Of a DNA stretch of 64,000 nucleotides, positions 1 to 57,653 are shown piece by piece; position 1 is the first letter of the stretch; every line of letters starts with the position of its first letter. This DNA is from Bugula neritina. Taxonomy: Eukaryota > Animalia > Bryozoa. The stretch lies in the NCBI GenBank assembly GCA_964035545.1, contig OZ037769.1, forward strand, positions 8,351,929 through 8,415,928. Reading direction: 5' to 3'. The notes under the pieces are model-generated. The model had not been told where the DNA came from. It saw only the letters and a program-made list of their open reading frames with translations, and did no database searches. The position numbers and the translations under genes are program-made.

Positions 1-40
1 ACAATCAATATTTAAAATAGTGTTGTTATACTAAACCTAC

Positions 41-15839: not shown

Positions 15840-15855
15840 GACTGTTATACGCAAG

Positions 15856-15873
15856 ATCCCACCGCTGCCACCA
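15856..15873 (-). promoter_or_regulatory. Primer-binding site complementary to a tRNA-Leu 3' end
   Basis: TGGTGGCAGCGGTGGGAT lies 1 nt inside the 5' LTR; it is the complement of the metazoan tRNA-Leu end ATCCCACCGCTGCCA-CCA. Confidence 0.85.
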
Positions 15874-16285
15874 CTGTAGTAATTCGTGTAATTGCTGTGC
15901 GTGAGTTTTCTACTTGCGTATTTAATTGGCTATTCTACTAGCAATCACTAGGGTAGCTGTCGAGTAATTACTTTTATTATTCACAATACAATACAAAACG
16001 AACATAACATCAAATTACACTATAACATCAGTCACTACTAACACATGTTTACACTTCAAGCCCTCGCTTACAACAACGTGATGATGGCTAATTGCCCGGA
16101 AACTGTCACATGAGTCGGAAGCATATCTTCCAGTTCTTCTGATTGGTTACTACATTGGGGCCTTATTATTCCAAGAATGGAGAGAGGACGATTCTTATAT
16201 TATTACATTGCGTGACCCACTACAATAGATAGGCCAGTGGAGTTCAGAGAACTGGGTGGGATGCAGTGTTGTGTTTCCGCCAATA

Positions 16286-16356
16286 GTCTCCGTGGTGTAA
16301 TGGTAGCACACTTGCTTGCAAGCCAGAGGACTTGGATTCGATTTCCAGTGGTCGCA
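16286..16356 (+). pseudogene. tRNA-derived sequence within the solo-LTR-like element
   Basis: GTCTCCGTGGTGTAATGGTAGCAC (A box, D arm) ... GGATTCGATTTCC (B-box-like T arm) ... GGTCGCA; 71 nt; acceptor and anticodon stems pair poorly. Confidence 0.62.
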
Positions 16357-25710: not shown

Positions 25711-27658
25711 TTGTGGGAAAGAAAACACTAAAAACTATTCCAAGCTTTGCAGCATTTAACCTAAGTATTGAACTATGGACAGACTACGAATCCAGGTTTA
25801 TGATGTTAATTGAGGCTAGTTCCTAATCACGGATGACAAAATATTGCAAATAGTTTTGAGGAGTCAGTTGGCAGTTATCTTTAAGCATTTCACTGATTGC
25901 GCAGCAGAATGCAGAGATCATAAAAACAATTAGCCGGCTCTCAATAGACAACATTCAAAAATACATAATGACCCTGTATCAACCATAGTCTTTTTTGTTT
26001 GCACCACAATAGGTATATTATATAAATTTGCATATTATTTTAGTATGACAATATTCTTGGATAAACATATTATTTATGTAACATATTATAGCAAGCATAC
26101 TTAAAGGGTAAATGGTGTGAACGACAAAGACTACCTCGTCAACAAACAATGGAAAACTGCTCCTTCAGTAACGTGTCATACTTCAAACACCTGGCGAGTT
26201 ACCAAGAATTGATCCACTTTTGCTACTAATACTGAATAATAACAGAGAAAAAGGCTTTGCTTTTTAAAGTCAAGTTGGATCTTTTTTTATGTATTTTCTA
26301 GACTGGACTAAAAGAGCCCTGAGTATTAGCACTAATTTTTGTTGTGTATTGATAGACCAGTATACAACAAAAATGATAAATTTCACATAAAAGCAGCTTT
26401 GTAAAAGAGTAACCAACTATGGGAGAAAAAGGGATATTAGCTAAAGTAGCAAGTTAAAGGGTTTTGTTAAAAAAAGCAGTTATAAAATGAAAATGATAAA
26501 AGATTGATCTGGTGAAAATGATACACACGCAGCAAGGCAGTTATAACACTGAGTCAGAAGGGTACTACTCAATCTGATTTTAAAACTATTATCATTTATT
26601 CTGAGTATTTTGTTGGATCTGATGAATAGCATGTCTTTCATTAGTTGACTGGCTTTACATGTCTTTAAAAAACAAACTTATATAGAAAAATTATTTAAAA
26701 AAATTGGAAGAAATTGTGAATAACATTGAAAAAATGAAAATGCTTTGGAACAGGACTTCAGCAGCTAAACCTAAAATATCATTTTTCTGTTTTCAGAAAA
26801 AAGACTGAAAAATAATTACGTGAATTGAAAAGCTTATGTATTTTCAGTCCCTGACCTAGTCAGCTCAACGTATCAAACACCAGAAAGTAAAAACTATTGG
26901 GTTTAAAAAAATTAGGGCAAAAACTAATATCCACCCTGTCCTAGTATATCATCAGTTTAGGCTTCTTCAGGAAGCAGAGCAACTCTAAAGATGCATTAAG
27001 GTAAAGGAAAAACTAATGTGTAAATATCTTTGTGGGAAATGTGTATTGACATATTTTACTTGCAGATAGAGTAATCAAACAGTTCTATACATACCTCAAT
27101 ATATTATTATCACAATGCTAGAAATTTACAACTCTGGCAGCTGTCAAATTTTACTATCTACACACTCCCTGTTGATAGTTAGAGGTAGACAGGTGAATGT
27201 AGCCGCCGTATCTTATCTTACATTAAGTAACTGCAAAATTACTTTCTTACAATAAATAAACAAATTTTCTAGTAACAATTCAAATGGTAAATTAATATAA
27301 TTGTCAACAATTTTTATTCTAACAATACGAACATATGAATATCAAACCATTGTTGAAAAACAATTTAAATAACCTCAATTGGATGCTATTTTATAAAACA
27401 TTGTTGTCTACTTTACTTGTGATAATTTTATGTATAAAACTAATATATAGTTATATGTTCTTTTAACATGTACAAAACTGTTATATATAATAGATGATTA
27501 TATTGATGCGAATGACATTTTAATTATTATCTAATATGGATTGGTGTGTAAACAATACACTCCGCTGTTCTGTATCTTGAACGGTGTACTTAACCTAGAA
27601 GATTTGGGTAATGTATGTTACATTATTCCAAATTGTTCAATGAATAGAATTATTGGAG

Positions 27659-29065
<1,407 letters not shown>

Positions 29066-30784
29066 CATGTTTCATCCTTTAATTTCAAAAATTAGTTGAA
29101 TACAACAAAGTTTTATTTCCTGTTATTGCAGTGTTATCTCAAACCAATACTTTGCTTCAGTAAATATGAAACACTATTAAGCCTTTTTTCTCAGCATGTT
29201 GATGTTCACATAACTTTACGATTACCATAATATCATAAACTGAATAAAGTACAACTATTTAAGCATCACATTTGACAGGTATAGATGAGCAAGTCTTTAC
29301 AAGATCTACTCTTAGTTCTTCAACAAAGATGTGGAATGAAGATTGCCAGCCGGTGTAGGCATCAGTGTCACCATACCCAGAGCATTGACCAACAGCATAG
29401 GTGATGTTGTGACTTCCCAAAGATATCCCGTGACATATTCCACTCACTGAAATATTTAACAAAAATCTGTATGAAGCTTGTTTCAGTTCTTCTTATAATT
29501 ATTTGCAAATACCTATTACCAATAATAAAAAATTACATGATATGGTTGTATAGATAGTTGACATGTGAGCCTAAAAAAATAAAGAGCTCAGAAACGAAAA
29601 AGTTGAAGCCTGTTCGGAATGAGCATACAGTTCATGTTGTGTATAAGCAACGTATAATTTGTGCCGTCTAAAACCATTTACCTTGCATTGGATGGTGCAT
29701 ATCTGTGTGGTAGTTGAAGTAGTGTACCCCTTCTATTCTCCCTGGTGAAGAACATTCAGCTTTGTCAATTTTAAAATACCTGTAATCAATACATATATTG
29801 AGTTAACATGTACAGCTATTTTACAATAACTGAAATCTTTTATCATTGAACTATTATTTTCATAAGCTTACCATCTCCCACATAATGAGTACCCATTACC
29901 AGGTACAATCCGATGATCTCCACTAGCAGTTAGTCTGAGTCCAGTCTTTGCATATTCCTTCACATAAGTTATGGTGTACAGATCTGCCACATCTTCATCT
30001 TTATTACTTGCCCAGTAGTGAAATCTCTCTAGATTTCCACTGTGACTTCTGTACATCTGATGATTATGAGATATTACTAAAATATGCAATTCTTTTGAGT
30101 AAACATCAAAAAAGCCTGTGATAATAATTTCATTTAGTACAGTTTGAATTTGGATTATAGATTTGAGACAGCAATTAATGTCATATATGCTGAGTGTTTT
30201 CTGCAGTATAAATTTACTTCAAATATACAAGTTTTTCATTGTGGCAACAAGAAAGCTTGCCTTGTTAATTTCGAGTTAAATAAAGTTTTTGGAAACTTTC
30301 ACGTTCTTAGCAGCTTAAAATTTTATACTTACAGAGCAAATTTTAAAACATTTGTTTTGTTGGCTATATGCATGCATATTTACAGAAAATAATTTTGATT
30401 CAAAAATGCTTCTCAATTATAGCGAGAAGTTACATTTATTTAAAGTCAAAGCCTATAAACTTAGTTATATAGTGCATTTAATAAAAGAAATATGCTGTTA
30501 ATAAAAACTCATGTTGTTGATTAAGAAAAGCAAATATTTCTACAGAGATATATTAGAAAGTTGTATTCAAACATGTTTGGTATGACAACTATATTATGTG
30601 ACTTATAACAAAAATTGATTTCCACTGCATTGACTTCGTGCATGGTCTCTTCTCACTTTTTAATATGTATACTTAGAGCCTTGAATGCACTATATATAAC
30701 ACCAATTGGAGCTCATTAAATTCAGAGCACTTGCATGAACAATTTTACTTTGTTATCCGTATTATATAGGAACTAAAATCTTAA

Positions 30785-31554
30785 AGGATTGCTCTATCTT
30801 GTCTAATAAATGGCCATTTAGGTCAAACACACATAATATTGTGTTTTTCTAAGCATGCATTGACAAAAAGCATTTGACCAAAGGTAGAAAAAGTTAGTTG
30901 AAGTTGAGGGTGTAGATTGGTAACAGCCAAAACGCTGATTTTGAAATGAGCTGGGAAATGTGACGTAACAGCGCCAGCATTCCTGCTGGTCACGTGACTA
31001 TACAAATGAATAACTATATAGAAATATGACTGTGAAATGTGATCTTTCAGCTCGTAATTTGTATATTTATAGAAGTGCAAATGTGAATTATCTCAATCTA
31101 TAGTTTTTTGACATGTTAAATAACATGTATGTGATAACATTAGGCCATATTTTGCTTGTAAACATAGAAAAAAGCATTGCAAAAACATGCATTCTGTAGG
31201 ATGAATGCCTGCGATCGATCTAAACTAGGTCAGATTGTGCAATATTACGGGCGCACCAAAGCTGACCTATATAGCGCACTGTAACTGCTTGAGCGTTATT
31301 GGTTGATGTTGCGCTCTGCAACCTTGAATACTAGCGTTATAGTTAGCACGTGCAGCATAGTTACTGGCGTTCACACGTCACATATTAGGCTATTCTTTTT
31401 CATGGCTGAAAATTTTACCTCCCTCAAAATTGGAATTTTGAAAAGCTGTTTTCTAGGCATATATCCCTTTGCAAAGTCACAATTGTTTGCATACACATTA
31501 GATTATAGTTCATAATTATAATGTGATTGTAATAAACTAAGATAGAGCAATCCT
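30785..31554. mobile_element. TTAA-TSD MITE (Kolobok-like) in an intron of paralog B
   Basis: TTAA|AGGATTGCTCTATCTT ... AAGATAGAGCAATCCT|TTAA, 16-bp perfect TIR. Confidence 0.82.
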
Positions 31555-33318
31555 TTAAAGTTATATTTATATACATATTAACTATATCCTCATTAGGAAC
31601 TTTATTAGCACCTCCATCAACTGCAAGACCTCTCCTCACTTCTTCAATGTGCAGACGTGAAGGAGAGTTAAATCCACCAGTAATAGTTCTTGTGGGTTGA
31701 CTAAAACTATCAATGCATCTCCCAACGTATATTCTAATGGTGTGTGTTCCTTTAGGCATTATGTTGTCACATATTCCTTCCACTGAAGCAAAAAGTTATG
31801 CAAAATGCATATTTATACTTACAGTTATATAAAATGCTGGTAAAAAATAGTTGATGATTAGTGCTTGTCATACAAGTTACCAAAAATGAAATTCTGTCTA
31901 GGCTTTTATAATTGAAATATTTTAAATGACTTGCATATGGGTCTGATTTTGACTCATTAAATGCTTTTTTAAATCAAACAGTTGCAACAAAAAATGACAT
32001 GTTCACAACCATTATACAGAAATTTAGTGAAAAGCATAATCCATAGTCAATTTTTTAAAAAAAAATTTTATGAAACACGGTACATATAATTGCATTAAAA
32101 TTTGTATAAATTTGTGTTGCATATCAAAAACAAATAGTTCCTAATGGCTAACATAGCACCTTTTGTGGCTAGAATGAATTAATCTCCAGTAACAGCTTAA
32201 ATTAGTAATCAACTAACTAGTCGTTCACTCAAACATATAGCTTATGTAGTTGCTATACGAAACATAGCTTGATTACTGAGTATGCATACAATGTCTCCCA
32301 TGGCTGATCCGGTACTGTAAACAAGCACTGATAAAAACTTAGGACGCATTACTATATAAACTACGGATTCAAAGCCACAACAACACCCCTTATACCATTA
32401 AAGAATTTGCCAGGTTTAAAAGCAAAGTTAGATCCATGGTTTAAAATATCAAATTTTCAAAAGTACGCTGCTAGTTTCATAAAACGATAAAACAAGACCT
32501 AGCCCAGACGACCGGTAGCCTACTAACTATAGTTTTATTATATACGTGAACTGACAAAAAAAGATGTTTACCGTATGAAAATTACCGAAGAAGAGCTTAT
32601 ACTGCACAACAACATTGCTAGGGATTACAAAAAAAGATCAAAGGAGACCTCAAGAAATAAACTTAAAAGCTGAACATCGTTGCTTTGAAAAAAAATTATG
32701 TAATATTTACAAGTTCCGCTTTTCCTATGGTGCCTCCAGTATTTATAGTTATTAGGTGAAGTGTGAGGTATTACATAATCAAGTTGGGGAAAGCACTCAC
32801 TGTCTTCTATCTTCACAAACCTGTAAAAATGTGAGCAGTATCTAAGAATAATATGTTAAAACCACCAACACACATATAGAAATTGAAAAGTGTTGAAATA
32901 CAGCTATAAGTTTTTAAAGTCAAACTGCTAAATTTTTTAAGTGACATTTGAAGCTTAAATAGTGCTTGTTAAATGGCAAACTTTCACCAGCTACTTTTTA
33001 CACTCGCCATGCATGCAACATGTTTTGGTCACAGTCCGTGCGGCAAATCAGCACTGTGTGATTTTACAGTGACTTTTAGAATACTTTCATTACAAAATAT
33101 GAATAGCTTAAAAGTGGTAAATTCTCAAAAACCTCGGGTAATCACCTTGACAATTGAAATTTTTGTTTAATTTAGACATAATATAGAAATAAATATTGTA
33201 CCAAAAAAATGTAATATAGTAGTTTGTTTTTTATGCAAGAAAAAAACAGTTATTTATAAATTTTTAAAAAAGTGTAATAGGCCAAACTATTTATTGTTTA
33301 AAATTTTGTGTGACCTAA

Positions 33319-36300
33319 TATGGAGTGCCAAATGGTCAAAAATTGCTTATTATTGCATCTCATATGCTTATAATAAAGTATCTAACCATTATTCTCTCTC
33401 ATGTGCTCACAAAACACTCTCATTGGTCTATAATTTGCTCTCATACCCTTATTATTTGTGCTCTTAGGTCTATTATTTGGTCTCACACTGTCATTATTCA
33501 CTCCCATACCCTTATTTCTCTTTCTTTTATGCTCATTATTCAGTCCCATACCTCCATTATGCACTCTCATACATTATTCATTCTCTTATGCTTATTATTC
33601 TCTCTCATACCCTTATTACTGTCTTGCTTTTGCACCTGATTCTGACTCACTAGTATTCGTGTACACGTCACAATAGTTGAGTATATGCCAGTCTATTCGG
33701 GTCACACTACTAAGCTCCACCCCATTTATCAAATCTGATTGGATAACTGCAATGACACTAAGAGTAATAATAAATGCTGGGTGGGTGCCTAGGTTTAGTT
33801 AGCCATTCTTCATTCATAAGTATCAGTCTAGGAGTGAACAACTTATACCAGTTAGATTCTTATCTCGATATTAACTGGTAAGCTAAATCACCCTTTGCAA
33901 ATTTACAGATTGGTTGGGCTTTCGAGTTCCTATAACTATTCAAACAGAATAGAGTTTGCTTTAAACTTCTAGTTTGAGGTAGAATTGCTCACATTTTTAT
34001 AAGTGGTGTTCAAAATGCAGCCTAGCAGTTTACAGATGATTGTAGTTAAAAAATATTATTAAATAGATAGCTGACAAGCTAAATATTTGCTTTTTAATTC
34101 AATGCCAAAATACTAAAATTAGCAGTTGGTTATTTTCACAAACCATTATTAAATTATGAGCTGCCAGTCGATTTTATCAGGTTTCGTAAGTGTAACTGCC
34201 CGTCTAGATTTACATGAAGTTTCATACAGGTGTATTTTTTAGTGTAGTTTATTTTCCACCAAAGTTGTTCACACCATTTACATCGTGAAACTCTTTTACC
34301 TTTTCTAGGAGAGAGTTGATATAAGTAAGAAATATTTTACACCATGCAATTGTGAGAATAGCTAATATATATGAAAGTAGATGTGGATATCTGAATAGAA
34401 CCCTGCCACCTAAGGGTTCTTACTGTTGTGACCTGGTTAAGTGTCTATATCTGTTTTACTCATTATGTGAAAAGTTAAGGTATTTGTTTTCTCAGTCATC
34501 ATTTTGAGTGCAATATTAGATAGAATGTGCTTGATTGTAAAGCAGTCAGCTAGTTGTTATAGTGAGTGCAGTCAGTGCAGAATAAAACATTTTACTCTTT
34601 CACATACACGCAATCCACCTTGTTACACTTACTAGAATAGTCGCGAGGATAAAAAACAGTAACATTTTAATGTGAAAAGTGACAAAACAAGTGCTAAAAA
34701 TATGAGAAAATTTGGTGACTCATCACTGTTGAAATGTGTGACAACACAAAGGCAGCGATGGTTTTATACTTAGCGTGGCAATGTTTGTAAAATTTTATAA
34801 TGGTTTTTGCAAATGATGATTGACCTAAATGAAATATTATAACAACAGGTTGAATTGCTCTGCGGTTACCTTTGTTGCTATCAATAAATTGGCAGCCATG
34901 CAAGTGTCAGTAAGCTAACTAGGTAACGGAACTAAATTTATGAAATTTTATTATTATTATCAAAGACGCTACAATAAATACAGCACAGCAGCCAAAAGCT
35001 GTTCCAAGTAGCAAGTAGCAACAGTTTTATGATTTCATTCTGAATTTTTAGATTATAAATTATAGCTGCTATATGAAATATATAAGGCTACTTATATGAA
35101 ATGGTTTACGAGCTGAATTTGTGGTCCCCTGTCCCTTTAAAGTGCCTTTAAAAATAGAAAATGCTAAAAAAATTTTATTAAATAATCTAATAATGCAGCC
35201 CAAAGTCTTTGTAGCAAGTAAAAAATACAACAAAACTAATGTCAAAAGCTAAAAGGAAATTTTAGGATTAGCTACAACAGCTCAAATGTTAGGTGACTTT
35301 AAAGTTGATCTAGTAATTTTTTCTTTGTATTTCTCAGCCAGTTCGGGCAACTTATTAAAAATTACTGTTATCAGCTCGTCATTTTTTTCAAAAAGTCATA
35401 AAAGATCTTTTAAAACTATCTAGCCAAGTACTTTCTACCGGCAGCGCATTCGGAGGTTGTCAGATTATAACTGCTCATTGGGGTAAAACTGTGTATGCCC
35501 CAGTAAACCTAAAATTTTCCTAATGCTTGTGTACTGTTCTATTAATAGTCAGGTGCTTTTCCTTATAATATTAAGTATAATAACCAGCTACTAATGCATG
35601 CCTTCCTATTAATAGCCATTGCTATCTTACTGATTATGTAAAATTGACTGTTACTCTGTGGTATTTCTGATTACATAATTTATATGAGGTGGGTTTTCAT
35701 TGCGAAATGTAGGTAACTTGTAGCAAACATAATCTCGCAACACTCACCACGATGCTTCTGGTGTGAGGCAGCTATAGAGAATTGGTTATTTCAAATATTG
35801 CATTTATTATTTCACTATTTTGCATAAAATAGTTACAACTTCTAAACTTCATTCTGTGCAATGCAGTCGTATAAGCCTGTAACCAACCATTTTCTAATCA
35901 TGGCACAAAAAAAGTAAAAACAAACTTATATTGAACTGGTTCCAAAAGTATGAACCAGCTATATAAGCCGAATTTATAATACTTGAGCTTATATTTACTA
36001 TCATTCAATTTTCGTGGGAACCTGGTATCAGTGAAAGTAAATTGAAACTTGAATGTAAACTTGGCTGCAAACTGTCAAACGGTTATTGTTGATTAGTTTA
36101 CAAAATATTACTATTTAAACAAATGAACCGATATTACATAATATTGCAAGAAAATACTTCTAATTTTTGTTGCTTCAAATCTCTTGTATAGAATAATGCA
36201 GCAATAACCTCTGAAGCGTAAAACTTTTAAGAGTAACTACTTAAATGTGAAGCAGTAATTTATAGCAGTAATTAGCTCAAGTAAAATAGGAATTGCTTTA

Positions 36301-39082
36301 AAATTAAAAGCTATTTTTGGACAGAGTTTCCCTTTTAAATTATGCTAATCTAAGATTATACTGTATGTAAGCACACGTAAAGTACTTTGACTGTCTACGT
36401 CAGGCTGTTAAACAATTACATATAAAATTATTTTTTTATGTATATGAATTGTAGAAGGAAAAACCTTACTGTAATTAATGCTTTATATCTACACGTGCTA
36501 AGAAACGTGCAGCCTGTAATAGTTATTGGGACACTGTTGTGTAATGATTAATAGGAATTTGGGGTAAACTAACTTGAAAAAACCTGATGCTGTAGCCACA
36601 AGCTCAAACTGAATTTTACAATTTGTGGCCTCCACAACAGAATATTCTACCTCTTTAGTCCTTGCTCTGAAGGCTTGGACACTCTTGTTCTAAGCCCTAA
36701 GATATTTTATTACTTTCCAACACTGGCTTTGGCAAAAATTTGTTTAGCTTTACATAATGTCCCTCTAGATATTCAAATTAGTTAAAAGATCGGTGTCAAC
36801 AAACTATTTTTGTTTATGTATAGTAAGTTTAACCTAAACTTTAAAGGCATTCTACTACACATTTATAAATTATGCAAAACACTAAATTTTGACGTTGAAT
36901 GTTGCAATTATCGTTTAATGGAGAAAAATTATTTAGGGATTACCCTAGTTTTATCAGACTAGCTACTATTATTTTGGTGTTCTATTTTATTTATAGTCAA
37001 TATTAACTGTAGCTTACGTATTTAAAATTACTGATAATGTCAGGAATTGCTTCTCCTGTGATTATCTCATAAGTTTCAAGTGACACAAACCAAGCCCATT
37101 ATATTGTTTTGCTCATATAACTAAGTTCTATAAGATCTATATAGCTAGTTTTAAAAGTATGAATTCTTCATTTTATTAACTTCAGAAATATTTTTGTTAC
37201 ATCTATACAATATTGAGATTAAGATAGGAATCTTATAGCTCCCACAATATGAAGTAGGTGCAGATATAAGAATTTACTATACAACATACAACTATACAAC
37301 CATTAAAATCTAACAATTCTACAAAGTATTAGGAAATACTAACAGCTCTGTCTCACACTGCCAACAAACACAAAACACTAGTCAGTCCTTGTCTAACACT
37401 AACAGCTATATCCTTAGCTTTCTACACTTTCAAATATTTTGGTAGCCGGTAGGGCTCATCTAACAAAAACTAAGAGTTTCTAACAAAATTTTATTAATGA
37501 GGAATTTTCTGTCAAAATCTCCATTTCTGCACAATATTCTGGTAAAACTTGTTCACTCCTAGACTGATACTTATGAATGAAGAATGGCTAACTAAACCTA
37601 GGCACCCACCCAGCATTTATTATTACTCTTGGTGTCATTGCAGTTATCCAATCAGATTTGATAAATGGGGTGGAGCTTAGTAGTGTGACCCGAATAGACT
37701 GGCATATACTCAACTATTGTGACGTGTACACGAATACTAGTGAGTCAGAATCAGGCACAAAAGCAAGACAGTAATAAGGGTATGAGAGAGAATAATAAGC
37801 ATAAGAGAAAGAATAATGTCTATAACAGAGCAAATAATAGGGGTATGAGAGTGCATAATGGAGGTATGGGACTGAATAATGAGCATAAAAGAAAGAGAAA
37901 TAAGGGTATGGGAATGAATAATGACAGTATGAGACCAAATAATAGACCTAAGAGCACAAAAAAAAGGGTATGAGAGCAAATTATAGACCAATGAGAGTGT
38001 TTTGTGAGCATATGAGAGAGAATAATGGTTAGATACTGTAGCGTCGCCACTAACTATAGATGAGTTGTACTGGTGTTGGTTTTCGTAACTTTATTTTTAC
38101 GTATTCCAACTGCCGTAAGAAACTATAAAAGTAGGTTAATATATACAATTATAATAGGTTTTTAAAACAAAACAAAACAAAAATTATTTATGACATTGTA
38201 AAGTATTCAAACATATATGCGGATTTTAGATTAATCACCTCTTGCCTTCTTTTAGTGGCTAGCTAGGGTGAGTTTGACTCTAGGAAATGACATTGTAGGT
38301 CTACTAAAAATATCAAAGTTTATAAGAAAAATGACAACAAATGATAACTGCCATAGACAAAGTTAATTAATTATCAGTTAAAGCAAGTATTAGTGCATGT
38401 ATCATATAAACAAAGATTGAACTTGTATTCAAAGTTGACTTGAATTAGTATAGTTGCAGTGAATTACTGTTATGAGTAAAAGTAAAACTTTTAGATATTT
38501 CAAACTTGTTAAACTCCTAAACATGTTAAATAAACCAAATATTTATTATTAAGTTGAAATAGATAAACAATACTTAAGGAAAGCTTCAAATCATACAAAT
38601 ACTGAAAAACAAAACTAACCTGTGCCTCTTGAAGTTAATTCCAATTCAAATTCATTTATATTTTGCTAATTATATCATTAAAATTTATTGCTATTTATGC
38701 GATGGAACTTGCATTGCCAGCGGCTACTATTCTACTAACTGTAGGGTCAACGTCTGCACTGAAACATCCGGGCTGCCAAGACGTAAGGCTACAGCCAATG
38801 GGCGAGGGCGTGCTGTTATCTAATTAATGAATTGACAACTATTGCAGTCGTTGCGTTGCGTATGTAGGCAAGAATCACGTGATGTGATCATCTATTTGAG
38901 TAGAATGTTGCGCTAAGCACAACGTTGAATGCTTAATAAACTGTTGGATATTCATTCCGTTATGCTGCTTTTACAACTTGAAATAATTATGCTCTAGAGT
39001 ATATGTGATAACTTCACAATACTTTATTATAAGCATATGAGATGCAATAATAAGGGAATTTTTGACCATTTGGCACTCCATA
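33319..39082. mobile_element. Long-TIR non-autonomous DNA transposon, IS3EU-like, in an intron of paralog B
   Basis: 6-bp TSD ACCTAA (33313-33318 / 39083-39088); termini TATGG..CCATA; ~520-bp TIRs (33319-33841 vs 37549-38036 + 39019-39082) built from ~21-bp CTCATACCCTTATTATT-like units. Confidence 0.85.
38037..39018. mobile_element. Solo LTR (~980 bp) inserted in the right TIR
   Basis: TGT..ACA ends; 4-bp TSD ATAC (38033-38036 / 39019-39022); absent from the left TIR. Confidence 0.8.
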
Positions 39083-42000
39083 ACCTAAAGCCTGAAACAT
39101 GCATGAAACTGAGTTTGCTTTAACGGTATAATGCACTGGCAAAAAACTGCCATCTTTGATCTATAATTATGAGAAACATATTATATGCATATTTTTGAGG
39201 AATTTCCTGAAAACAAAACTTTTTTTCAGATTGTAAGATTACTATAATGAGAAAGAGGTTACTTGAAATTTTCCTGAAAAAGTTTTTAAACTAATCAATA
39301 AAAGATGTATATAGCAGCTCAACAAGTCATGAAAATTAAGCATTGTAAAATAACTAAAGAAAACTAACATATCTATATAAAATATATAAGTAATAAATTA
39401 TGCTAGTAAAATTACCTAAGAGTGTCAACTAAACTTTCTTACTACTTCAAGTTCAGTGTGAAAGTCAGTGTCTGAAAATTATTACTTAATACATAGAACT
39501 CACCACCTGGCGCAGTGAGTTACTGCATTTGTATCAAGCACTACAGATGCCAATGCGCTGTACTTTATTCTTAGACTTGTGTCGTCTGAAACTTTGTCAT
39601 ATGTCACTTCCTGTGTAAAGAAATGCTAGCTTAGCAAATAAATGCTCGATTGATACTATATGTTTTTGTTTGATTATAGGATATTTAATTTTTATTCATA
39701 GTTTAAAAATCTCAACATATATCATAATACATGTTTCAGACACTCTGTAAATACTTTATTCATAAAAAATATTGTATTATAACTAATCTGATAAAAAATC
39801 AGTCATGTTTCTTTCTCATCTTGGAGAGCAGTTGCGATGCTAATAGCTAAACTACTGGGATAGTAAATACATGGTAGTATAGTTTAGGTCTTAGTAAAGA
39901 TGATTGGTGTTGCCAAAAAAAGCATTAACCATCATTTCCCATTTCTCACAATAGAAGTGAGATTTTAATCTCTTAGGAGTTGTTTCATTGGTGATGACTT
40001 TAGAAATAAGTATAGAGATAAATAACAAATTGTTTAAAACAAAAATTAAGATCTAATTAAAGTCTTTTTAGTTGCCTATAGTTAAGATAATTTTAGCACT
40101 ATGGCTTGCCTTTAATAACACAATCTGAGGTCTCAAAAAACAAATTGTGACTTTTGAAAATAAGTTTGCCAAAATTAAATTGTTAAAATAGCTGCCACAG
40201 CAAAAAACGAAATATATTGTTGGGTACAGAATCACACGTTCCTTTGACAACTGTTTATGATGTTATAGTTTAATCTTTACTATCAAATTTGACTTAAAAG
40301 CTGAAACTAGAAAAATGGTATTATTCAGACATAGTTCATATTTGCGTGTGGTACGTTAGCTTTAGTGATTCAAGGTTGATGCTGGCATATAGAGATTGTA
40401 TGGTACCTCAATGAGAAGGTTCTCAGCATCAAGATCAACCGTCTGATCAACTTCTTCATTCCAAGTTTCATACTTGTAGTTGAACCCATTGAGGAGAGGG
40501 CAGGAAAGAAGGTTTTCATCTAAAAAATATTGGTGAAGGATATTTATCTACAATACTTGATTTTCATCAAGCTGATAGATACAACTACTTAACATTCATT
40601 ATAAAGTTGCCACAGCAGCTGGCTAGTCAGCTGAGTGAACTCGTAAATTAATTGATTGCATAAAATATTCTTAAAATTTATCATCGGCCTGCAATACTAG
40701 AAAAGCTGTATGTGGCACATATTTTATTTGTTTTAGGTAAAAGGCTGAGCAATTTATAAATAATTAATCTGCTGCTGGAGGTTGAAATCAATAACAATAT
40801 CAAATTTATTTTTTTAAGATATTTGCAGCGTTCCAAGTGAGTTTTACCACAATGTATATACACTGAACAGTTATTGGTACAAAGAACAAAGAAACACAAG
40901 TTTCTGTCGCTGATAATCATAGAGCTCAAACTCACTACATCTGTCATGGTAATGTTGGGAACTTGATGTATTATTGTTATTTATGATAATTTCCCAACTA
41001 AAAATTATAATTGATTTTGATTTTGCTAAAGTTCAATTACGAATTTTTTGTAAAGTACTTTTAAGAACTGTGATGCTAAAAGCTAGAAAAAAGTTTTAAT
41101 TTGCTTTATCTCAACACTTTAGAGACTAATTAGAACTAAATCAAAGAATTCTTTGTCTTCACAGCTTTATATTAAATTCAGAAAGCTGCTGCAAACCTAG
41201 AGTTACTTGTGGTGGCACCATCTCTATAATCAACATCGTTCTTGCAGAGTTCCATCCAGAGTAAGCATCACTGGATCCATAACCATCACATGGGCCGACT
41301 ATACTAACTCTACTACTCTGTCACCAGCATCTAGTCCATAGCATGTACCATCAACTAAATATTAGTAAGTTTTGATGGCACTAATATTATTATAAAAAAA
41401 TTATAGAAATCAACATCAATTCAAGTTAGTCTCTGCTCCGACAAGTTATAATGGATTTTCGTTTATTAAATAGCATATTGTAGGTACCGTATAATATCTC
41501 AACAATAAAAATTGGCATTAAACATCTTTAAAAATATTATCTTGTTATAACATTAGGTAACAAAGGTTTGATCCATAGGCATGTATTCTAAGAAGTTGTT
41601 TTTTAGAAGACACTCAATATCTAAAAGAGTGTTTATACTAAGCCTACTGTCTATTGCTCGGTGTAATTCTCCTGTAGTAGCACTGTAATCTAACACCTCA
41701 ATAGTGTCTGGGTTAGAGCACTTGTTACCATCAAATGTCAAGTACCAGTGGTGACAAAAGTCAGCCCTATTATTATGTCCTCTGACAGCCATGTGGATAA
41801 TGACTCTCAGTGCTGATTCAGCCCTAGACTTTGGGTAAGTAGCTGTCTGAAAATATTGTTGACATAATCTGACTAGCAGCTCATTAAATCTTGAGTCAAC
41901 ACAAACCTAGTTTTGTATAAATAATGAAATATATATATTATATATTAATGCAATTGCCTTAAATATAAGTTTATTTTAGTTACTTTTTAAAAACAACAAC

Positions 42001-43697
42001 TGGATGTTTTCAAAAAAATTGTGAATTAAACCTAATACAGTTGCTCAGTACAAACTATTGCTGTAATATTTTACAATTGTACATTTTACCATTATGATGC
42101 CTTCATCTTTGCTATCTTGAAGATCTGTAGACCAATAATGTCTGATGTTTGTGTACTCATTTTTCAACCCACATTCAGTTGATTCTTCACCTGCTGTAGA
42201 ATTATTCTCAAGTATAATTACTAGAATCAAGATGGTTGTAAAATATACCTAATGTTATGTTACATAAATGCAATCTAACTTGGTGATTGTGCTTTTTTCA
42301 AACATAGAAGCTTATTCATAACTATAATCTACAATTATTGCTATATGAAACGGGAATATATACACTGTTATTTTAATATTGTTACTTCGGTTTTGTGTAC
42401 AGGCATAGCTAGACTGCTATGATATGTAAGATCTTGAATCACAGTGAATTTTACCATTGCAAAAAGAGTGAGAGATTAAAAAGCCTTAATTATTTTCAGG
42501 AGAACATATTTCTACTTTATTCATAAAATAGTGTGAGTTAATTGAATGCATCGATGCTTTGTTAAAGCACAATTATTTCATAGGTCCCTGTGATCATGTA
42601 TTGTGGTTAAACATGAGAATTTACCTACCTAAGCAAATCGGGTTTTCTAAGACGGTCTCTCCACATCCAACCATGCAGATTTCTAAATTTGAACAATTTC
42701 TACCACTGCAGTTTGTCAGCTATTAAACAGAAAAATAGACAAATATTTATGTACATCACAATTGAAAAATATATTCAATCAATATATTAAATCAGTAAAC
42801 TAAAAATATACTTTGTGTTTAATATTTCTAAATATAACAATTATTTATAATTTATATTTGCATGCATGTTAGCAGTAGCCCACAATAAAAGACTGAATAG
42901 AAAAAGTCTTACAAAATATGTTTAATCACTGGCATACAGTCTTTAAATCATACAAAAGAGATAAAATAATAAATTTATAAAAAGACTTTCAATATGTTTT
43001 ATTATGCTGGTTTGATTTTAATTATTGTTTAAAAACTGCGTAAATCAACAAGCTAAAATATTATTTGAAATGTGGTCTGTATACTCACTACACTACAGTT
43101 GTTCCCAATAAATCAGTAGTATAGCAGTATTTTACCCCGAAAAAAGGTACCAAATAATTTTAATAAAACGAAATACAATCTAATATAAAAGTTTAAAGGC
43201 ACCATCACCTCTGAAATTGTTGAGGGAGATTTAGCTTATTTAAATTTGATTGGGGTTTAAAGCTTACCTCCCCTGTTGCCATTAGCTCCATGAAATATCC
43301 GTCAACAGAATCATTTTTAGAAGATAAATTCAAAGTGGAAGTTGACCCATTCAATTCATAACACATTCCTAAAACAGCTATGATGCGTCATAATAGCTAT
43401 GAAATCACCAAACAAATATTTTAGGTGCATCATAAAGATGCATAATTAACCTGATTTCTTAATTGCTAGTGAAAAAGAAATTGAAATAAAAGTATCGCAT
43501 TAGCATTATTCTCATTTGTTTATTTATTATAATCATTTTAAGCTATACTTTAAAACATTTTGTTAAGTGCATACATATTTTATTAAATGAATCCATTGGA
43601 CCCTAATATTGAAATTTCTTAGTTCACAATTTACACATTTCACACAAATTGCTACTTAAGTAACCACTAACATATGCTACATTTATGTAATATAATA

Positions 43698-44106
43698 GGG
43701 TCAGTTTACTTCATTTAGTACACACCAGCAAATTATGACCTAACATTAAAGTTTGCTCCAAATCCATTGAAATTTACTATACATGGTATTTTTATGTGCT
43801 GGTTTTAATTACGCATAACAGCAAAGGCTGGGAGGGGATTCCCCAACATTAAAGCACAGGTCATTGTCATATGCACTTAATATTCTATATGCATGGATCG
43901 TTACGAAAAAACCGTAACGGTCCGTAACCAAAACTAGCTGAATAATTAGGGAAAAACGTGGGAAATGAAACAAAATTAAAAAGAACTTTGATTATTTAGG
44001 TGTATTTATTGGTGCTTAACTAGTTTTGGCTCATTACCAGCTAAATTGTGAAAAATAGCTAAAAACTGAAGATTTCGAGTGTGTACTAAATTAAGTAAAA
44101 TGACCC
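43698..44106. mobile_element. MITE with 4-bp TSD (Sola-like), 409 bp
   Basis: AATA|GGGTCAGTTTACTTCATTTAGTACACAC ... GTGTGTACTAAATTAAGTAAAATGACCC|AATA; empty site in paralog A at ~2107. Confidence 0.85.
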
Positions 44107-46550
44107 AATAAATGATACATATATTATATAATATTTTAAAATAATATTTATTGTATGATGAATTTTTAGAAAATTCTGAAAACAAAATTCTAGGCAGCTG
44201 GCAACATACTTTTGTGCCATTTCATGTTAAACTATAAATCATTGAGTGACGAAGACTTTTTGCATTTGCAAATATAAATATTTAAAATTAATATTATTAG
44301 GAACTTTGCTGATGAAAATATGTGTGTGATTTAATAAAAGTAAGCTTATAGAAACGTCTACAAAAGGCAAAACATGTTCTTCTCAAATTACAATGCAAAT
44401 TTAGTTTTCTTATAGAACTCATTATATACATAGTCACAATGTATGCGACAATTCAACACACATATTTTATTACTCGCTTATATAATAACAAACACTGTTG
44501 TTATATATGTAGTTATTGACTTGATATAAATAATTGATGATTATTTTATAATATGAAAACAAAATTGCTTTTTAATGCAACCTTAGACATCAAACAATAT
44601 TTTAATAATGCAGTTAATGTACAGAAAGTGATTATATGACAAAGAAATTTAAACTAAAATAATGATCCATTAAGCATTAATTAGATGTCAATTGTTGTCA
44701 AACTTGATTGCAAAGATAAAGACAGCAAAGCTTATATTTGAATTATTGATTTGTTCAAAAGTTTAAGCATTTGTTATAATAATATCATGTAACAATTAAA
44801 AATAGCTATAGGCAATTTGACTCACATGCAAACAATCCACTACCACGTGTGTATATATACACACGCGGTAGGGGGTTGCTTGAGTCTGTAAGTCAAAATC
44901 CCTAGCTATTCCTAATTGTTACATGATATTATTATAACAAATACTTGAAATATTAGCAATTGTATCAGTAGCTATATGTGCTATGCTAATTTACTGGTTG
45001 GAAAATAATATTTTGAACTTCCTAGCTTATAGAACAAAATAATTTTATTTCTATTACATAGCATGATTTTTCATCAACATAGCTTCTATAATAAGCAACT
45101 TATTATAACTGCTATCTTTTACCTGCATTGCTTCTAAAAATAGCATTACATTGCAAAGGGAAATTTCTCCAGCAGTTGACTAAACACTCTGTAAGACTTC
45201 TGGTTGATGATTTTCTGGTTATAAGAGAGCTCTTAGGGTTGAGATACTGGTCTTTTGATACACTGACAGAGTTTCCACAGTCTGGTAGATCTACAAAATA
45301 TCATGTGCAGGATACCAGGCTTAGCACTATCACAGGTTTATTCTATATGATTTTATTATTTTTAGAACATATAATGTATTATACTGATATATGCAATTAA
45401 TTTATATGAAAATAATATGATTTTCTAGACTCAGTAGAATAACTATACAATAGGTTGCCACACAATACATTCAATGTTTAAACATTTTAACAGCAACTGC
45501 AGTATTATTTAGAGTAAGTTAAAAATCTATGTTGATTAACATGTTACTGAATCTAATCTTGTAGGAAATAATCATTTAATTATGCCAATGAATTCTGTAG
45601 TCTGCATGGCACGAAATGAATACCAATAAAACTAACTTTTCAGGCTGTTTAAAATTTACAATGAAAACAAAACCTAAATTTTAAAACTCATATTAAGCTG
45701 CTTTTTCCCATTGATAACTTTATAAGTAATATATAATGACAGAAACACACTTACCTAATATACCCGTCATAGCTAAATGAAATGATGATAAACATAACCA
45801 ACTGATGAACAGTGTCGTACTTTTCAACTTCATCCTAAAATACATGAGTCAACTATTTTAGCTTATGTTATTCAATATAAAAGTTTACATATATTATATT
45901 GATAATTGCTAGTGCTATAATAATCTTTGTTTGTATAATGTTTTAGTAATAACATATGAACATTCTAACATAGCTAGAATTTTGAATATATTTATATATA
46001 GATGTTAATAACTCATTTTCTTTTTAGGATAACTTGGAGCACTTGGGCAAAGTTTAATTTGTTTGGTTATGCATAATTTATCTATTTAATTTTTTTTAAA
46101 TATAATAGTGGTTTTGGAACATGAGAAAAAACATTAGAATTTAAATTTGTCACAATAATTATGATATTTATAATTATATCATAACAATTTATGTTATACT
46201 TATTTTATAAACTAGCTACTATAAAATTGATTGAATTATCACAGTATCTATATAAGGTTTGAGATTTAACAATAAAATGACAATAATTGAAATTTTCTAA
46301 TTTACTTTACAGAAATTTTTTGCAATATATTGAATATTTCAATGCATAAATTAAACAAAAGCTGACCTTTATCTAACAAACCTCTCAACTTTAATTTATT
46401 TGTTATAACTGATATGTGCTAGGTCTATAAGGCCCCGTAAGGAAGTTGACAGATGCCTGCTGGTTATTTTGGAGGTCTAGCAGAGGCTTGTTTGTTATCA
46501 GTGCCACCAGACCATCCTCGTCTTTACTGTTTGGTATGAAGCTGTATCCC

Positions 46551-48191
46551 ACCAGAATAGAAGTACTAGCCCAGAAAGAAGCTTTTATTACTTTAAAAGA
46601 TCACAAACCTAACTTCAATAACAAACCATCCTGCAGACTAATAAACCCCACCAAATCCAACATCGGTATAATCAGCAAACAACTATTGGATAATATAAAC
46701 ACAAAACTCCTCCAGCATATAAAAGTCAACATATGGAAAAACTCCCACTCAGTAATAAATTGGTTTGAAGACATCAAGAACAAAAGCAGTAAGTCATTTA
46801 TTACTTTTGACATATGCAATTTCTACCCATCAATAACCGAAGACCTCCTTTACAAAGCCCTTTCCTTTGCGTCACATTTTACCAGCATACCAACTGAACA
46901 CCAGGAAATAATTTTACACTCTAAAAAGTCCATTCTTATCTCCAATGGTGAACAATGGACAAAAAAACACAACAGCAACTTTGATGTCACTATGGGAAGT
47001 TATGACGGCGCCGAAACCTGCCAACTAATTGGAATATATTTGCTTAATCTATTAACTACTGAAATGAATATAGAATGTAATTTAGGCCTGTATAGAGATG
47101 ATGGACTCATAGTTTGCGAAGGAACACCTAGACACATAGAACAGAACAAAAAACAAATTTGCAACTTTTTTAGAAAATTTAATCTCTCAATCACAATAGA
47201 AGCCAATAAGAAAGTTGTAAACTTTCTAGATGTAACATTCAACTTGACTAACCAATCCTATAAACCCTATACAAAACCTGGAAACACTATCCTCTACGTT
47301 CACAAACAAAGCGACCACCCACCTGCAGTATTGAAAAACATACCAGAAAATATAAATAGAAGACTTAGCTCACTATCCTCCAATGAAGAAGAGTTTAAAA
47401 CCACCATACAACCGTACCAAGAAGCACTATCAAACAGTGGATATGACTATAAATTAAAATATAACCCGACACCCAAATCCAACAACAATAATAGAAATAG
47501 AAACAGAAACATATTGTGGTACAACCCACCTTTTAGTTCAGCAGTAAAAACCAAAATAGGGAAGAAATTTCTTCAAATCATCGACAAATGCTTTCCACCA
47601 TCCAACCAACTAAGTAAAATTTTCAATAGGAAAACTATAAAAATTAGCTATTCATGCATGCCCAACATGAAAAATATTATTGATGGCTCGAACCATCACA
47701 AACTTAAAACCGCACACACCCCTACTACCGCTACTAAACTAAATGACACACAATGTAACTGCAAACAACCTTCCCACTGTCCACTAAATGGTAAATGCTT
47801 ATACAAAGACGTAATATACCAAGCAACTGTAACAAGACAGGACAATAATTCCAGCCATTCATACATAGGACTCTGTTCGACTACCTTCAAAACCAGATTC
47901 AATAACCACAAAGCCTCTTTCCTACATGCAGATAAAGCTAACAGCACGCAACTCAGCAGACACATCTGGAATTTAAAAGACAACAAAACGAAATTCAGCT
48001 TAAAATGGAATATTTTAAAGATTTGCAAATCATACTCAAACCTAACCAATAGATGTAATTTATGCAACTATGAGAAGTATATAATTTTAAAACAACCGGA
48101 ATTATCTTCCCTCAACAAACGAAAAGAGCTTTCCACCACGTGTAGACATAAACGCAAATTTTTACTTGCGCACTTAACAGACGCTAGTTAA
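46551..48191 (+). CDS. Penelope-like reverse transcriptase + GIY-YIG endonuclease (N-truncated, uninterrupted)
   Basis: FITFDICNFYPSI, FDVTMGSYDGAE, LGLYRDDGL, NFLDVTF, WYNPPFS, CNC..CPLNGKC, VIYQATV..YIGLC..FKTRFNNH, CNLC. Confidence 0.92.
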   Translation, partial: TRIEVLAQKEAFITLKDHKPNFNNKPSCRLINPTKSNIGIISKQLLDNINTKLLQHIKVNIWKNSHSVINWFEDIKNKSSKSFITFDICNFYPSITEDLLYKALSFASHFTSIPTEHQEIILHSKKSILISNGEQWTKKHNSNFDVTMGSYDGAETCQLIGIYLLNLLTTEMNIECNLGLYRDDGLIVCEGTPRHIEQNKKQICNFFRKFNLSITIEANKKVVNFLDVTFNLTNQSYKPYTKPGNTILYVHKQSDHPPAVLKNIPENINRRLSSLSSNEEEFKTTIQPYQEALSNSGYDYKLKYNPTPKSNNNNRNRNRNILWYNPPFSSAVKTKIGKKFLQIIDKCFPPSNQLSKIFNRKTIKISYSCMPNMKNIIDGSNHHKLKTAHTPTTATKLNDTQCNCKQPSHCPLNGKCLYKDVIYQATVTRQDNNSSHSYIGLCSTTFKTRFNNHKASFLHADKANSTQLSRHIWNLKDNKTKFSLKWNILKICKSYSNLTNRCNLCNYEKYIILKQPELSSLNKRKELSTTCRHKRKFLLAHLTDAS

Positions 48192-57574: not shown

Positions 57575-57653
57575 TTGTGCAAACAATTGTAGATTTAAAA
57601 TATGTAAACTTTGCCATGTCAAAAACATATCTTAAAATCTTGCTAATTTTAGG

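What the first reader, a model, noticed from the sequence alone, without database searches (positions are those of the whole stretch)
29259..45833. Collagen-less secreted protein family: signal-PAN-Cys-rich-(CTHRC1 C-terminal domain)x3
Seen: 14 phase-compatible exons splice to about 620 aa (after repairing one frameshift), with three diverged copies of the CTHRC1-like domain, an N-terminal PAN/apple-like Cys pattern, a FOLN/EGF-like module, and no Gly-X-Y run. Established: canonical CTHRC1 has a short collagen helix plus one such domain, and is a secreted modulator of Wnt/PCP and TGF-beta signalling; PAN domains mediate protein or glycan binding. Inference: three domains in one chain could form a single-chain pseudo-trimer that makes the collagen helix unnecessary, with PAN as a targeting head. 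This is the best candidate for an undescribed system here. I cannot confirm novelty without a search.
Basis: partly seen in the sequence, partly recalled or inferred. Interest (0 to 1): 0.85.

Follow-up and report, generated by a model that had tools for sequence, protein, structure and literature searches.

The report
Collagen-less triple CTHRC1-head secreted protein gene
This is a real 14-exon gene, broken by a 2-base insertion in this copy, from a large bryozoan family of secreted proteins whose three linked CTHRC1-type domains probably fold into one C1q-like "trimer" on a single chain, a design that sits unnamed in databases and that no paper I could find describes.

Summary
On the minus strand, 14 exons (45833 to 29259) join through 13 GT-AG introns with matching phases. 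They give 632 aa if two extra bases in exon 7 are skipped. As assembled the frame stops at residue 263.

The order is signal peptide, PAN/apple-like module, 6-Cys linker, then three diverged CTHRC1_C domains (26-39% alike). There is no Gly-X-Y run.

- Pfam CTHRC1_C matches all three domains exon by exon.
- PAN is supported only indirectly.
- A FOLN/EGF label is not supported.

At least 20 loci in this 216-Mb bugulid-bryozoan-like genome keep the same order. One nearby paralog is fully intact. Lingula anatina "uncharacterized" proteins and an uninterrupted 611-aa ORF on one public contig share the design.

An AlphaFold model of that relative's three domains (pTM 0.87) superposes on engineered single-chain adiponectin, C1q and TNF-family trimers (Z 20-25). 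No splice junction was confirmed by RNA. The spliced model itself went to no search or fold tool.

The scan already found this family on eight other pieces of this genome. I class it as a new variant of a known kind.

The parts
45764..45833 (-). Exon 1: start codon (45833-45831) and predicted signal peptide of about 23 aa. Phase-1 donor.
   Evidence: One search gives the splice sites and phases. The ATG at 45833 is the Met kept in all paralogs, whereas the upstream Met is not. The signal peptide is read by eye (basic start, hydrophobic core) and was not tested with a predictor.
45123..45290 (-). Exon 2: first part of the PAN/apple-like module, with 4 conserved Cys.
   Evidence: No Pfam hit on the exon alone. 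A profile of 14 paralog exons aligns to the PAN_1 segment of the Lingula/Logan proteins at hhalign E 1.3e-4. The Cys columns are shared with a true PAN_1 domain. The genome holds 23 paralogous copies. RNA-like contigs cover 45118-45293.
43268..43368 (-). Exon 3: second part of the PAN-like module, holding the last PAN Cys.
   Evidence: It is the only island between E2 and E4 that is about 90% conserved in two diverged paralogs. Acceptor, donor and phases are canonical. An RNA-like contig lies at 43312-43395.
42629..42719 (-). Exon 4: Cys-rich linker. The sixth Cys lies in exon 5.
   Evidence: It aligns collinearly with the Lingula/Logan linker (E 0.024). No Pfam family matches at E up to 10.
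42090..42193 (-). Exon 5: start of CTHRC1_C domain 1.
   Evidence: The acceptor is conserved in three copies.
41648..41846 (-). Exon 6: middle of domain 1.
   Evidence: Pfam CTHRC1_C, 34 bits, E 4e-8, profile positions 25-83.
41207..41354 (-). Exon 7: end of domain 1. It carries two extra bases (TATA at 41300-41303 where paralogs have TA) that shift the frame.
   Evidence: Alignment with three paralogs. Pfam CTHRC1_C positions 113-137 match downstream of the shift. The one DNA-run contig over the site lacks the 2 bases but carries the sister copy's letters nearby.
40407..40547 (-). Exon 8: D1-D2 linker and start of domain 2.
   Evidence: It is conserved in paralogs and collinear with the Lingula/Logan linker.
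39504..39610 (-). Exon 9: domain 2, second part. Phase-2 donor inside the Trp codon, as in domain 3.
32711..32820 (-). Exon 10: domain 2, third part.
   Evidence: A paralog matches it.
31612..31782 (-). Exon 11: end of domain 2 and D2-D3 linker.
   Evidence: Pfam CTHRC1_C, 28.4 bits, positions 95-136.
29872..30076 (-). Exon 12: start of domain 3.
   Evidence: Pfam CTHRC1_C, 24 bits, positions 1-57.
29682..29779 (-). Exon 13: middle of domain 3.
   Evidence: Pfam CTHRC1_C, 23 bits, positions 53-84.
29259..29446 (-). Exon 14: end of domain 3, a short two-Cys tail and the stop codon (29261-29259).
   Evidence: Pfam CTHRC1_C, 54 bits, E 2.8e-14. The two-Cys tail is kept in paralogs and in a Bugula neritina protein.
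33374..38040 (.). Inserted element of about 4.7 kb with terminal inverted repeats, inside intron 9. It explains the 6.7-kb intron.
   Evidence: Inverted arms 33374-33851 and 37539-38040 are 95-98% complementary. The intact compact paralog has a 1.2-kb intron here.

Best explanation
The locus is one copy of a tandemly expanded gene family in a bugulid-type bryozoan. The family has at least 20 full-architecture loci, and about 36 by its last exon.

The encoded protein is secreted. It has a signal peptide, one PAN/apple-type module, a conserved 6-Cys linker and three non-identical CTHRC1_C domains. It has no collagen stalk.

The three jelly-roll domains most likely pack around a pseudo-threefold axis into a single C1q/TNF-like head. 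One chain would then do what three collagen-tied chains do in ordinary CTHRC1, with three different faces, as in the C1q A/B/C head.

The likely job (inference) is extracellular binding of a glycan or protein ligand. The PAN module would add a second binding site, and the C-terminal Cys pair could allow covalent pairing.

This copy carries a 2-base insertion in exon 7, so as assembled it is a pseudogene or holds an assembly error. A paralog 45 kb away is intact.

Shown: exon structure, domain content, family size, relatives in Lingula, purifying selection.
Shown on a relative's model only: the trimer-like packing and the PAN fold.
Inferred: secretion, ligand binding, biological role.
For: Gene model and family:
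- 14 exons with GT-AG introns and matching phases give 632 aa with no inner stop once the 2 extra bases are skipped.
- The homologous 14 exons of the paralog at C5:8452878-8442520 give an uninterrupted 632-aa ORF.
- Pfam CTHRC1_C matches all three domains.
- In the own genome, PF25815 gives 117 or more exon-level hits. There are 23 PAN exons and 36, 35 and about 26 exons of D3, D2 and D1 type. Twenty loci show PAN>D1>D2>D3 in order on one strand.
- dN/dS against the intact paralog is 0.34 overall and 0.11 for PAN.

Relatives:
- Lingula XP_013395411.1, XP_013395410.1 and XP_013399537.1, and a 611-aa uninterrupted ORF on one Logan contig, show PAN_1 above Pfam's cut-off plus three CTHRC1_C domains.

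Packing:
- The AF2 model of P0017:150-611 has pTM 0.87 and pLDDT 79.5.
- Its top matches are the single-chain trimers 4DOU, 5HZF, 5HKJ, 5KCA and 4ZCH, at Z 25.1-20.5 over 337-350 residues spanning all three domains. The next matches reach only Z about 7.

PAN:
- hhalign E 1.3e-4 onto the PAN_1 segment.
- The model of the Lingula N-terminus, built with our exons as alignment rows, matches only PAN/apple structures.

Expression:
- Contigs of three runs of the same organism lie only on predicted exons plus a repeat. They are 95-97% alike, so they probably come from paralogs.
Against: - No splice junction was seen in RNA. The contigs were too short and come from paralogs.
- This copy is frameshifted. 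Its sister copy has a 1-base loss in a T-run of exon 8.
- The fold tests used relatives (P0017, P0005) that are only about 30-45% identical to this gene over short stretches. The MSA had 11 rows. AlphaFold may lay C1q-like domains into a trimer from memory.
- The PAN exons have no Pfam hit of their own, and the PAN model has low confidence (pLDDT 63).
- No functional or expression-site data exist.
Confidence: 0.78

Rival explanations
1. This locus is a dead copy. The TA insertion in exon 7 is real, the gene makes no full-length protein, and only paralogs are functional.
For: As assembled the frame stops at aa 263. Three paralogs lack the insertion. RNA-like contigs over the exons are only 95-97% alike, so they probably come from other copies. 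The sister copy also has a frame-breaking indel.
Against: All 13 splice sites and the rest of the ORF are intact. The copy differs from its sister by only 20 coding changes, with pN/pS 0.5, too few to tell. The only DNA-run contig across the site lacks the 2 bases (table 4), so an assembly error or a private allele is possible.
Confidence: 0.45
2. The domains are beads on a string. Each of the three domains trimerises with the same domain of two other chains (or with other family members), giving multivalent networks rather than one intrachain head.
For: Ordinary C1q/TNF/CTHRC1 heads are intermolecular trimers (PMC7058181). Relatives exist with 2, 4, 5, 8 and 13 tandem domains, which cannot all be single pseudo-trimers. 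The published view of multi-gC1q bivalve proteins is higher valency (PMC10672478).
Against: pTM 0.87 for the three-domain chain, and Z 20-25 to single-chain trimers over the whole length. Three is the commonest multi-domain count among hits, with 8 of 15 multi-stretch proteins. The inter-domain linkers are short and conserved.
Confidence: 0.17
3. There are two genes: a PAN + one-domain gene (exons 1-7) and a separate two-domain gene (exons 8-14).
For: No RNA junction links exon 7 to exon 8. GenBank's Bugula neritina model KAF6026444.1 has only two domains.
Against: Exon 8 has no start codon or signal peptide, and it follows exon 7 in phase 0. Lingula and Logan relatives carry all parts in one ORF. 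The order and spacing recur at 20 loci. The intact paralog reads through as 632 aa.
Confidence: 0.04

Closest known systems
CTHRC1 / Cthrc1 family (vertebrates, cnidarians and others; Leclere et al. 2020, PMC7058181)
   Same: It shares the C-terminal globular domain (Pfam PF25815), it is secreted, and it shows lineage-specific tandem expansions. That paper models the domain as a C1q-like jelly roll that trimerises.
   Different: This gene has no Gly-X-Y stalk. It has three diverged copies of the domain in one chain instead of one, and an N-terminal PAN module and Cys-rich linker are added. It fails the paper's own definition (collagen repeat plus C-terminal domain). I found bryozoans nowhere in the paper's text and no passage describing tandem domains (term searches).
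Lingula anatina LOC106162620 and LOC106165752 (XP_013395411.1, XP_013395410.1, XP_013399537.1), 'uncharacterized protein'
   Same: The architecture is the same: signal, PAN_1, 6-Cys linker, three CTHRC1_C domains, about 600 aa. Our exons align to them collinearly.
   Different: They are only about 30-45% identical over short stretches. They lack the two-Cys C-terminal tail. They are predicted models with no study behind them. Position-by-position orthology of D1, D2 and D3 is neither shown nor rejected.
Bivalve C1qDC proteins with three tandem gC1q domains (HcC1qDC6, PMC5519582; HcC1qDC5 and CfC1qDC-2 in review PMC10672478)
   Same: They are secreted invertebrate proteins with three C1q-fold heads on one chain and no collagen stalk. 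They belong to large, tandemly expanded families and act as lectin-like pattern-recognition proteins.
   Different: Their domain family is true gC1q, not CTHRC1_C. They have no PAN module. The papers discuss valency, not an intrachain pseudo-trimer.
Engineered single-chain trimers: adiponectin (4DOU), C1q globular head (5HKJ, 5HZF), Cbln1 (5KCA), APRIL-BAFF-BAFF (4ZCH)
   Same: They are the best structural matches to the three-domain model over its whole length (Z 20.5-25.1, 337-350 aligned residues).
   Different: They are man-made fusions of chains that are naturally separate. Sequence identity is 6-10%. The match is to a model of a relative, not to a solved structure of this protein.
TNF-like trimeric lectins (Burkholderia BC2L-C N-domain, Photorhabdus PLTL), Chlamydia Pgp3 C-domain, Bacillus BclA/ExsFA
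   Same: They are the best single-domain structural matches (Z 5.4-7.2). Several of them bind glycans as trimers.
   Different: They are bacterial, single-domain and intermolecular trimers. Scores at this level may reflect only the shared jelly-roll fold.

Membership tests
Cthrc1 sensu Leclere et al. 2020 (collagen repeat + C-terminal domain) | CTHRC1 C-terminal globular domain | tested here: met
   Pfam PF25815 matches exon by exon. E14 scores 54 bits, E6 34 bits and E11 28.4 bits, all above the 27-bit cut-off. E12, E13 and E7 score 22-24 bits.
Cthrc1 sensu Leclere et al. 2020 (collagen repeat + C-terminal domain) | Short collagen triple-helix (Gly-X-Y) repeat before the globular domain | tested here: not met
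   The 632-aa reading has no run of three or more G-X-Y triplets. No Collagen profile hits any exon or the Lingula/Logan relatives.
Cthrc1 sensu Leclere et al. 2020 (collagen repeat + C-terminal domain) | One globular domain per chain, trimerised between chains | tested here: not met
   There are three domains per chain. The oligomeric state itself cannot be tested here.
Cthrc1 sensu Leclere et al. 2020 (collagen repeat + C-terminal domain) | Modulates Wnt/PCP and TGF-beta/BMP signalling | not testable with these tools
   This needs experiments. Nothing in the sequence speaks to it.
PAN/apple domain (Pfam PF00024 PAN_1) | Profile match to PAN_1 or a related PAN model | tested here: inconclusive
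   Exon 2 alone gives no Pfam hit at E up to 1. The Lingula/Logan relatives pass PAN_1 at 21.7-25.8 bits against a 21.4-bit cut-off. A profile of 14 paralog exons against those relatives gives hhalign E 1.3e-4 on the PAN_1 segment. The joined E2+E3 was not searched because it has no reference.
PAN/apple domain (Pfam PF00024 PAN_1) | PAN fold: a beta-sheet packed on one helix, pinned by conserved disulfides | tested here: inconclusive
   The model of Lingula P0005:25-135, with our exons as alignment rows, has pLDDT 63 (core 77-87). Its order is strands, then one helix, then strands. All top Foldseek hits are PAN/apple (HGF N domain, SML-2 lectin, plasminogen, factor XI), but only at E 3e-3 to 0.1. 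Four Cys columns are invariant across our exons and true PAN domains.
C1q/TNF-type trimeric head formed within one chain | Three jelly-roll domains packed around a pseudo-threefold axis | tested here: inconclusive
   The feature is met on a model of a relative: pTM 0.87, and Z 20.5-25.1 to five single-chain trimers over all three domains. It was not tested on this gene's own protein. The separate-chain complex test gave no verdict. No solved CTHRC1_C structure exists by sequence.
Follistatin-N (FOLN) / EGF-like module | Profile match to a FOLN or EGF family | tested here: not met
   No Pfam family matches at E up to 10 for exon 4 or for the equivalent segments of two relatives (P0005, P0017). 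The third relative (P0024) gave only a chance-level hit to an unrelated family, not FOLN or EGF. The module is a conserved 6-Cys linker of unassigned type.

The most novel reading that the evidence does not exclude
The PAN + triple-CTHRC1 proteins are a natural single-chain mimic of a C1q-type heterotrimer. On this reading it arose once before bryozoans and brachiopods split, and was then multiplied in bryozoans into a repertoire of 20-36 secreted recognition proteins. These would serve innate immunity, symbiont handling or colony self/non-self recognition, with the three unlike faces of the head tuned separately.
Probability: 0.22. Interest if true: 0.75.

Novelty: new variant of a known kind. 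Interest (0 to 1): 0.55.

Why it matters
CTHRC1 is studied as a collagen-tied trimer in vertebrate repair, fibrosis and cancer. By sequence search, the PDB holds no structure of its head domain.

A natural protein that builds the same kind of head from three different domains on one chain would show that the collagen stalk is dispensable for assembly. It would offer an easy monomeric target for the first structure of this fold. It would also parallel what engineers built on purpose for adiponectin, C1q and TNF ligands.

The size of the family in a bryozoan, and its presence in a brachiopod, point to an unstudied class of lophophorate extracellular binding proteins. This resembles the C1qDC expansions of bivalves.

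For this one locus the practical message is smaller: it is a frameshifted copy, and the intact neighbour is the one to study.

Tried and rejected
- **RNA junctions.** Read laying on 40300-46000 found one DNA-like run covering everything. Three runs of unrecorded kind covered only predicted exons E2, E3, E5-E8 and a high-copy repeat. Their contigs are 65-123 nt long and 95-97% alike, so they come from paralogs. No exon-exon joint was seen. E1 and E4 had no cover, probably because these exons differ too much between copies to pass the 95% bar.
- **Complex prediction.** The three domains of P0017 as separate chains gave no verdict: score 0.44 against 0.32 for one control. This is neither for nor against.
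- **Wrong exon rejected.** A small 'PAN second half' exon next to E2 (45098-45058) would need a 24-nt intron and is not conserved in diverged copies.
- **Word-index searches.** The search for homologous proteins with the family alignment and with the Bugula protein returned almost nothing new.
- **PDB sequence searches.** Profiles of the PAN exon and of the three-domain alignment gave no hit.
- **Domain trees.** The first tree used a faulty domain mapping. The second leaves positional orthology across phyla unresolved, with AU p 0.32-0.45.
- The spliced 632-aa model has no reference, so it was sent to no search or folding tool. Searches ran exon by exon and fold tests ran on relatives. The joined reading was used only inside scripts: ORF check, dN/dS, domain identities and tree.
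Full report
**What is there.** The window is AT-rich (about 30% GC). It is C5:8351929-8415928 of a 216-Mb, 321-contig assembly.

On the minus strand between 45833 and 29259 I rebuilt a gene from three sources. These were stop-to-stop frames, splice-site tables and conservation against paralogs.

The result is 14 exons (coordinates under 'parts'). All 13 introns are GT..AG and all phases are compatible.

With two extra bases in exon 7 skipped, the reading is 632 aa with no inner stop, 27 Cys and no run of three or more Gly-X-Y triplets. As assembled the frame stops at residue 263.

The one place where the obvious reading is wrong is the second PAN exon. An open frame next to exon 2 would need a 24-nt intron and is not conserved. 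The real exon is the 90%-conserved island at 43368-43268.

**Domains.**
- *CTHRC1_C.* Pfam PF25815 (137 positions) matches exons of all three domains. D1 scores 34 and 22.5 bits, D2 28.4 bits, and D3 24, 23 and 54 bits. The three domains are 26-39% identical to each other.
- *PAN.* Exon 2 has no Pfam hit of its own. A profile of 14 paralogous copies of that exon aligns to the PAN_1 segment of the Lingula/Logan relatives at hhalign E 1.3e-4. Four Cys columns are invariant across our exons, those relatives and a bona fide PAN_1 domain.
- *PAN fold.* A model of the Lingula N-terminus, with our exons as alignment rows, has modest confidence (pLDDT 63, core 77-87). Every top structural match is a PAN/apple domain: HGF N domain, Sarcocystis SML-2 lectin, plasminogen and factor XI.
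- *Cys-rich exon 4.* It is conserved with the relatives but matches no FOLN, EGF or other Pfam family, even at E 10.

**The frameshift.** Exon 7 reads TATA at 41300-41303 where three paralogs read TA.

The single DNA-run contig over the site lacks the two bases. Its nearby letters (41461, 41489) are those of the sister copy, so it may be that copy.

The sister copy (C5:8224805-8209679) is 98-100% identical per exon and is part of a tandem duplication of about 170 kb. It has its own 1-base loss in a T-run of exon 8. Ours and the sister differ by 20 coding changes, with pN/pS 0.5, too few to judge.

Whether our insertion is a mutation or an assembly error stays open.

**A family, not a single gene.** The own genome holds:
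- 117 or more exon-level CTHRC1_C hits, clustered on C5, C9, C3 and C6;
- 23 PAN exons;
- 36 exons of D3 type, 35 of D2 type and about 26 of D1 type.

Twenty loci show PAN, D1, D2 and D3 in that order on one strand within a few kb. These are lower bounds.

The window itself also holds the N-terminal half of the upstream paralog (9-3850, minus strand). It also holds the first eight exons of a head-to-head paralog (57639-63677, plus strand).

The paralog at C5:8452878-8442520 keeps all 14 exons and splice sites and reads through as 632 aa. It is 82% identical to ours. dN/dS is 0.34 overall: PAN 0.11, D1 0.61, D2 0.42 and D3 0.27. The family is therefore under purifying selection.

**Relatives elsewhere.** A profile of 14 last-exon copies, searched against 1.84 billion representatives, gave 484 hits. 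Proteins with the same architecture are:
- Lingula anatina XP_013395411.1 and XP_013395410.1 (LOC106162620) and XP_013399537.1, all labelled 'uncharacterized';
- two MetaClust entries;
- a 611-aa ORF uninterrupted on one 2.6-kb Logan contig.

All have PAN_1 above Pfam's cut-off plus two or three CTHRC1_C domains.

KAF6026444.1, 'CTHRC1 [Bugula neritina]', is a two-domain model. It matches C9:10.205-10.211 Mb of this genome at 81-85% identity. The host is therefore a bugulid-type bryozoan, close to that record but not identical to it.

Tandem CTHRC1_C domains also occur in other settings:
- an Oscarella protein with collagen, four domains and fn2;
- a mosaic protein with laminin-G, fn2, PAN and pentraxin domains;
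- metagenome proteins, probably bacterial, with 3, 5 or 8 domains.

In a domain tree the three domains of one such metagenome protein (P0001) form their own clade. One origin for each of D1, D2 and D3 across bryozoan, brachiopod and the Logan protein is neither supported nor rejected (AU p 0.45, 0.32, 0.35).

**How it probably works.** By sequence search, no CTHRC1_C structure is solved. Leclere et al. modelled the domain as a C1q-like jelly roll that trimerises (PMC7058181).

I folded the three-domain part of the Logan relative (P0017:150-611, 11-row alignment). The model is all-beta, with pLDDT 79.5 and pTM 0.87. A pTM this high for 462 residues means the three domains are placed with confidence relative to each other.

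The best matches in the PDB are the engineered single-chain trimers of adiponectin (4DOU), C1q (5HZF, 5HKJ), Cbln1 (5KCA) and APRIL-BAFF-BAFF (4ZCH). VIA-align gives Z 25.1, 25.1, 24.5, 23.5 and 20.5, with 337-350 residues aligned at 3.3-3.8 A, spanning model residues 5-458. The next rows are single-domain matches at Z about 7: TNF-like lectins, Pgp3 and BclA/ExsFA.

The caveats:
- it is a relative, not this gene;
- the alignment is shallow;
- AlphaFold knows C1q/TNF trimers;
- the separate-chain test gave no verdict.

Ligand binding, the role of PAN and the role of the C-terminal Cys pair are inference.

**Expression.** Three runs from the same organism and study, of unrecorded kind, cover only bins holding predicted exons plus a very high-copy element at 43547-44119. 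The contigs are short and 95-97% alike, and they show no joints. This suggests the family is transcribed. It says nothing firm about this copy or its junctions.

**Known or new.** I found no paper that names the Lingula or Bugula accessions, the domain architecture, or CTHRC1 in bryozoans. The key family paper defines Cthrc1 by collagen plus head. In its text I found collagen-less heads mentioned only outside animals.

On the other side:
- the proteins already sit in RefSeq/UniProt;
- Pfam holds the domain;
- bivalve proteins with three tandem gC1q domains are published as immune lectins (PMC5519582, PMC10672478).

The scan's own notes show eight earlier findings of this family on other pieces of the same genome, with the same reading. 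I reached mine before reading them, and my tests agree.

**Limits.** The spliced model has no reference, so it went to no search or folding tool. Searches were exon by exon. The joined reading was used only inside scripts for the ORF check, dN/dS, identities and the tree.

**Verdict.** This is a new variant of a known kind (CTHRC1 / C1q-fold heads). This copy is broken as assembled.

Noticed in passing
window 9-3850 (-) and 57639-63677 (+): Two more family members lie partly in the window. One is the N-terminal half (signal, PAN, Cys-rich, D1) of the upstream paralog. The other is the first eight exons of a paralog that sits head-to-head with the studied gene, about 11.8 kb from its start.
   Followed up: partly
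G000:C5 8.176-8.222 Mb vs 8.346-8.398 Mb: A tandem segmental duplication of about 170 kb carries two family genes in each copy, with exons 98-100% identical. The sister of the studied gene has a 1-base loss in a T-run of exon 8. It could be a real recent duplication or a haplotype kept twice.
   Followed up: partly
window 43547-44119: A very high-copy element lies in intron 3. Summed contig depth is 10^4-10^5 or more in all four runs, including the RNA-like ones, with many loose ends at 43700 and 44108-44110 marking its edges.
   Followed up: no
window 33374-38040: An element of about 4.7 kb with terminal inverted repeats of roughly 480-500 nt (95-98% complementary) lies inside intron 9. The compact paralog lacks it.
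   Followed up: partly
window 12000-16000 and 23935-25728: GC-rich islands (43-56% GC in a 30% GC background) hold retroelement ORFs. A 597-aa ORF has integrase, retroviral SH3-like and RVT_2 (copia-type) domains. A 408-aa ORF has a weak aspartyl-protease hit.
   Followed up: partly
window 46446-48191 (+): A 581-aa open frame lies just upstream of the gene's start. It contains a YRDDG motif typical of reverse transcriptases but has no Pfam hit at E 1e-3.
   Followed up: no
window 16286-16356 (+): This tRNA match (32 bits, just over the gathering score) is the only Rfam hit in the window.
   Followed up: no
P0001, P0012, P0040 (metagenome proteins): Metagenome proteins (JGI/IMG), probably bacterial, also carry exactly three tandem CTHRC1_C domains. 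In the one included in the second tree (P0001) the three domains form their own clade, which suggests an independent triplication.
   Followed up: partly
window 40333-40375: One contig of the DNA-like run skips 41 bases here, with GT..AG ends, inside intron 8. It is probably an indel between copies or alleles, not splicing (table 5).
   Followed up: no
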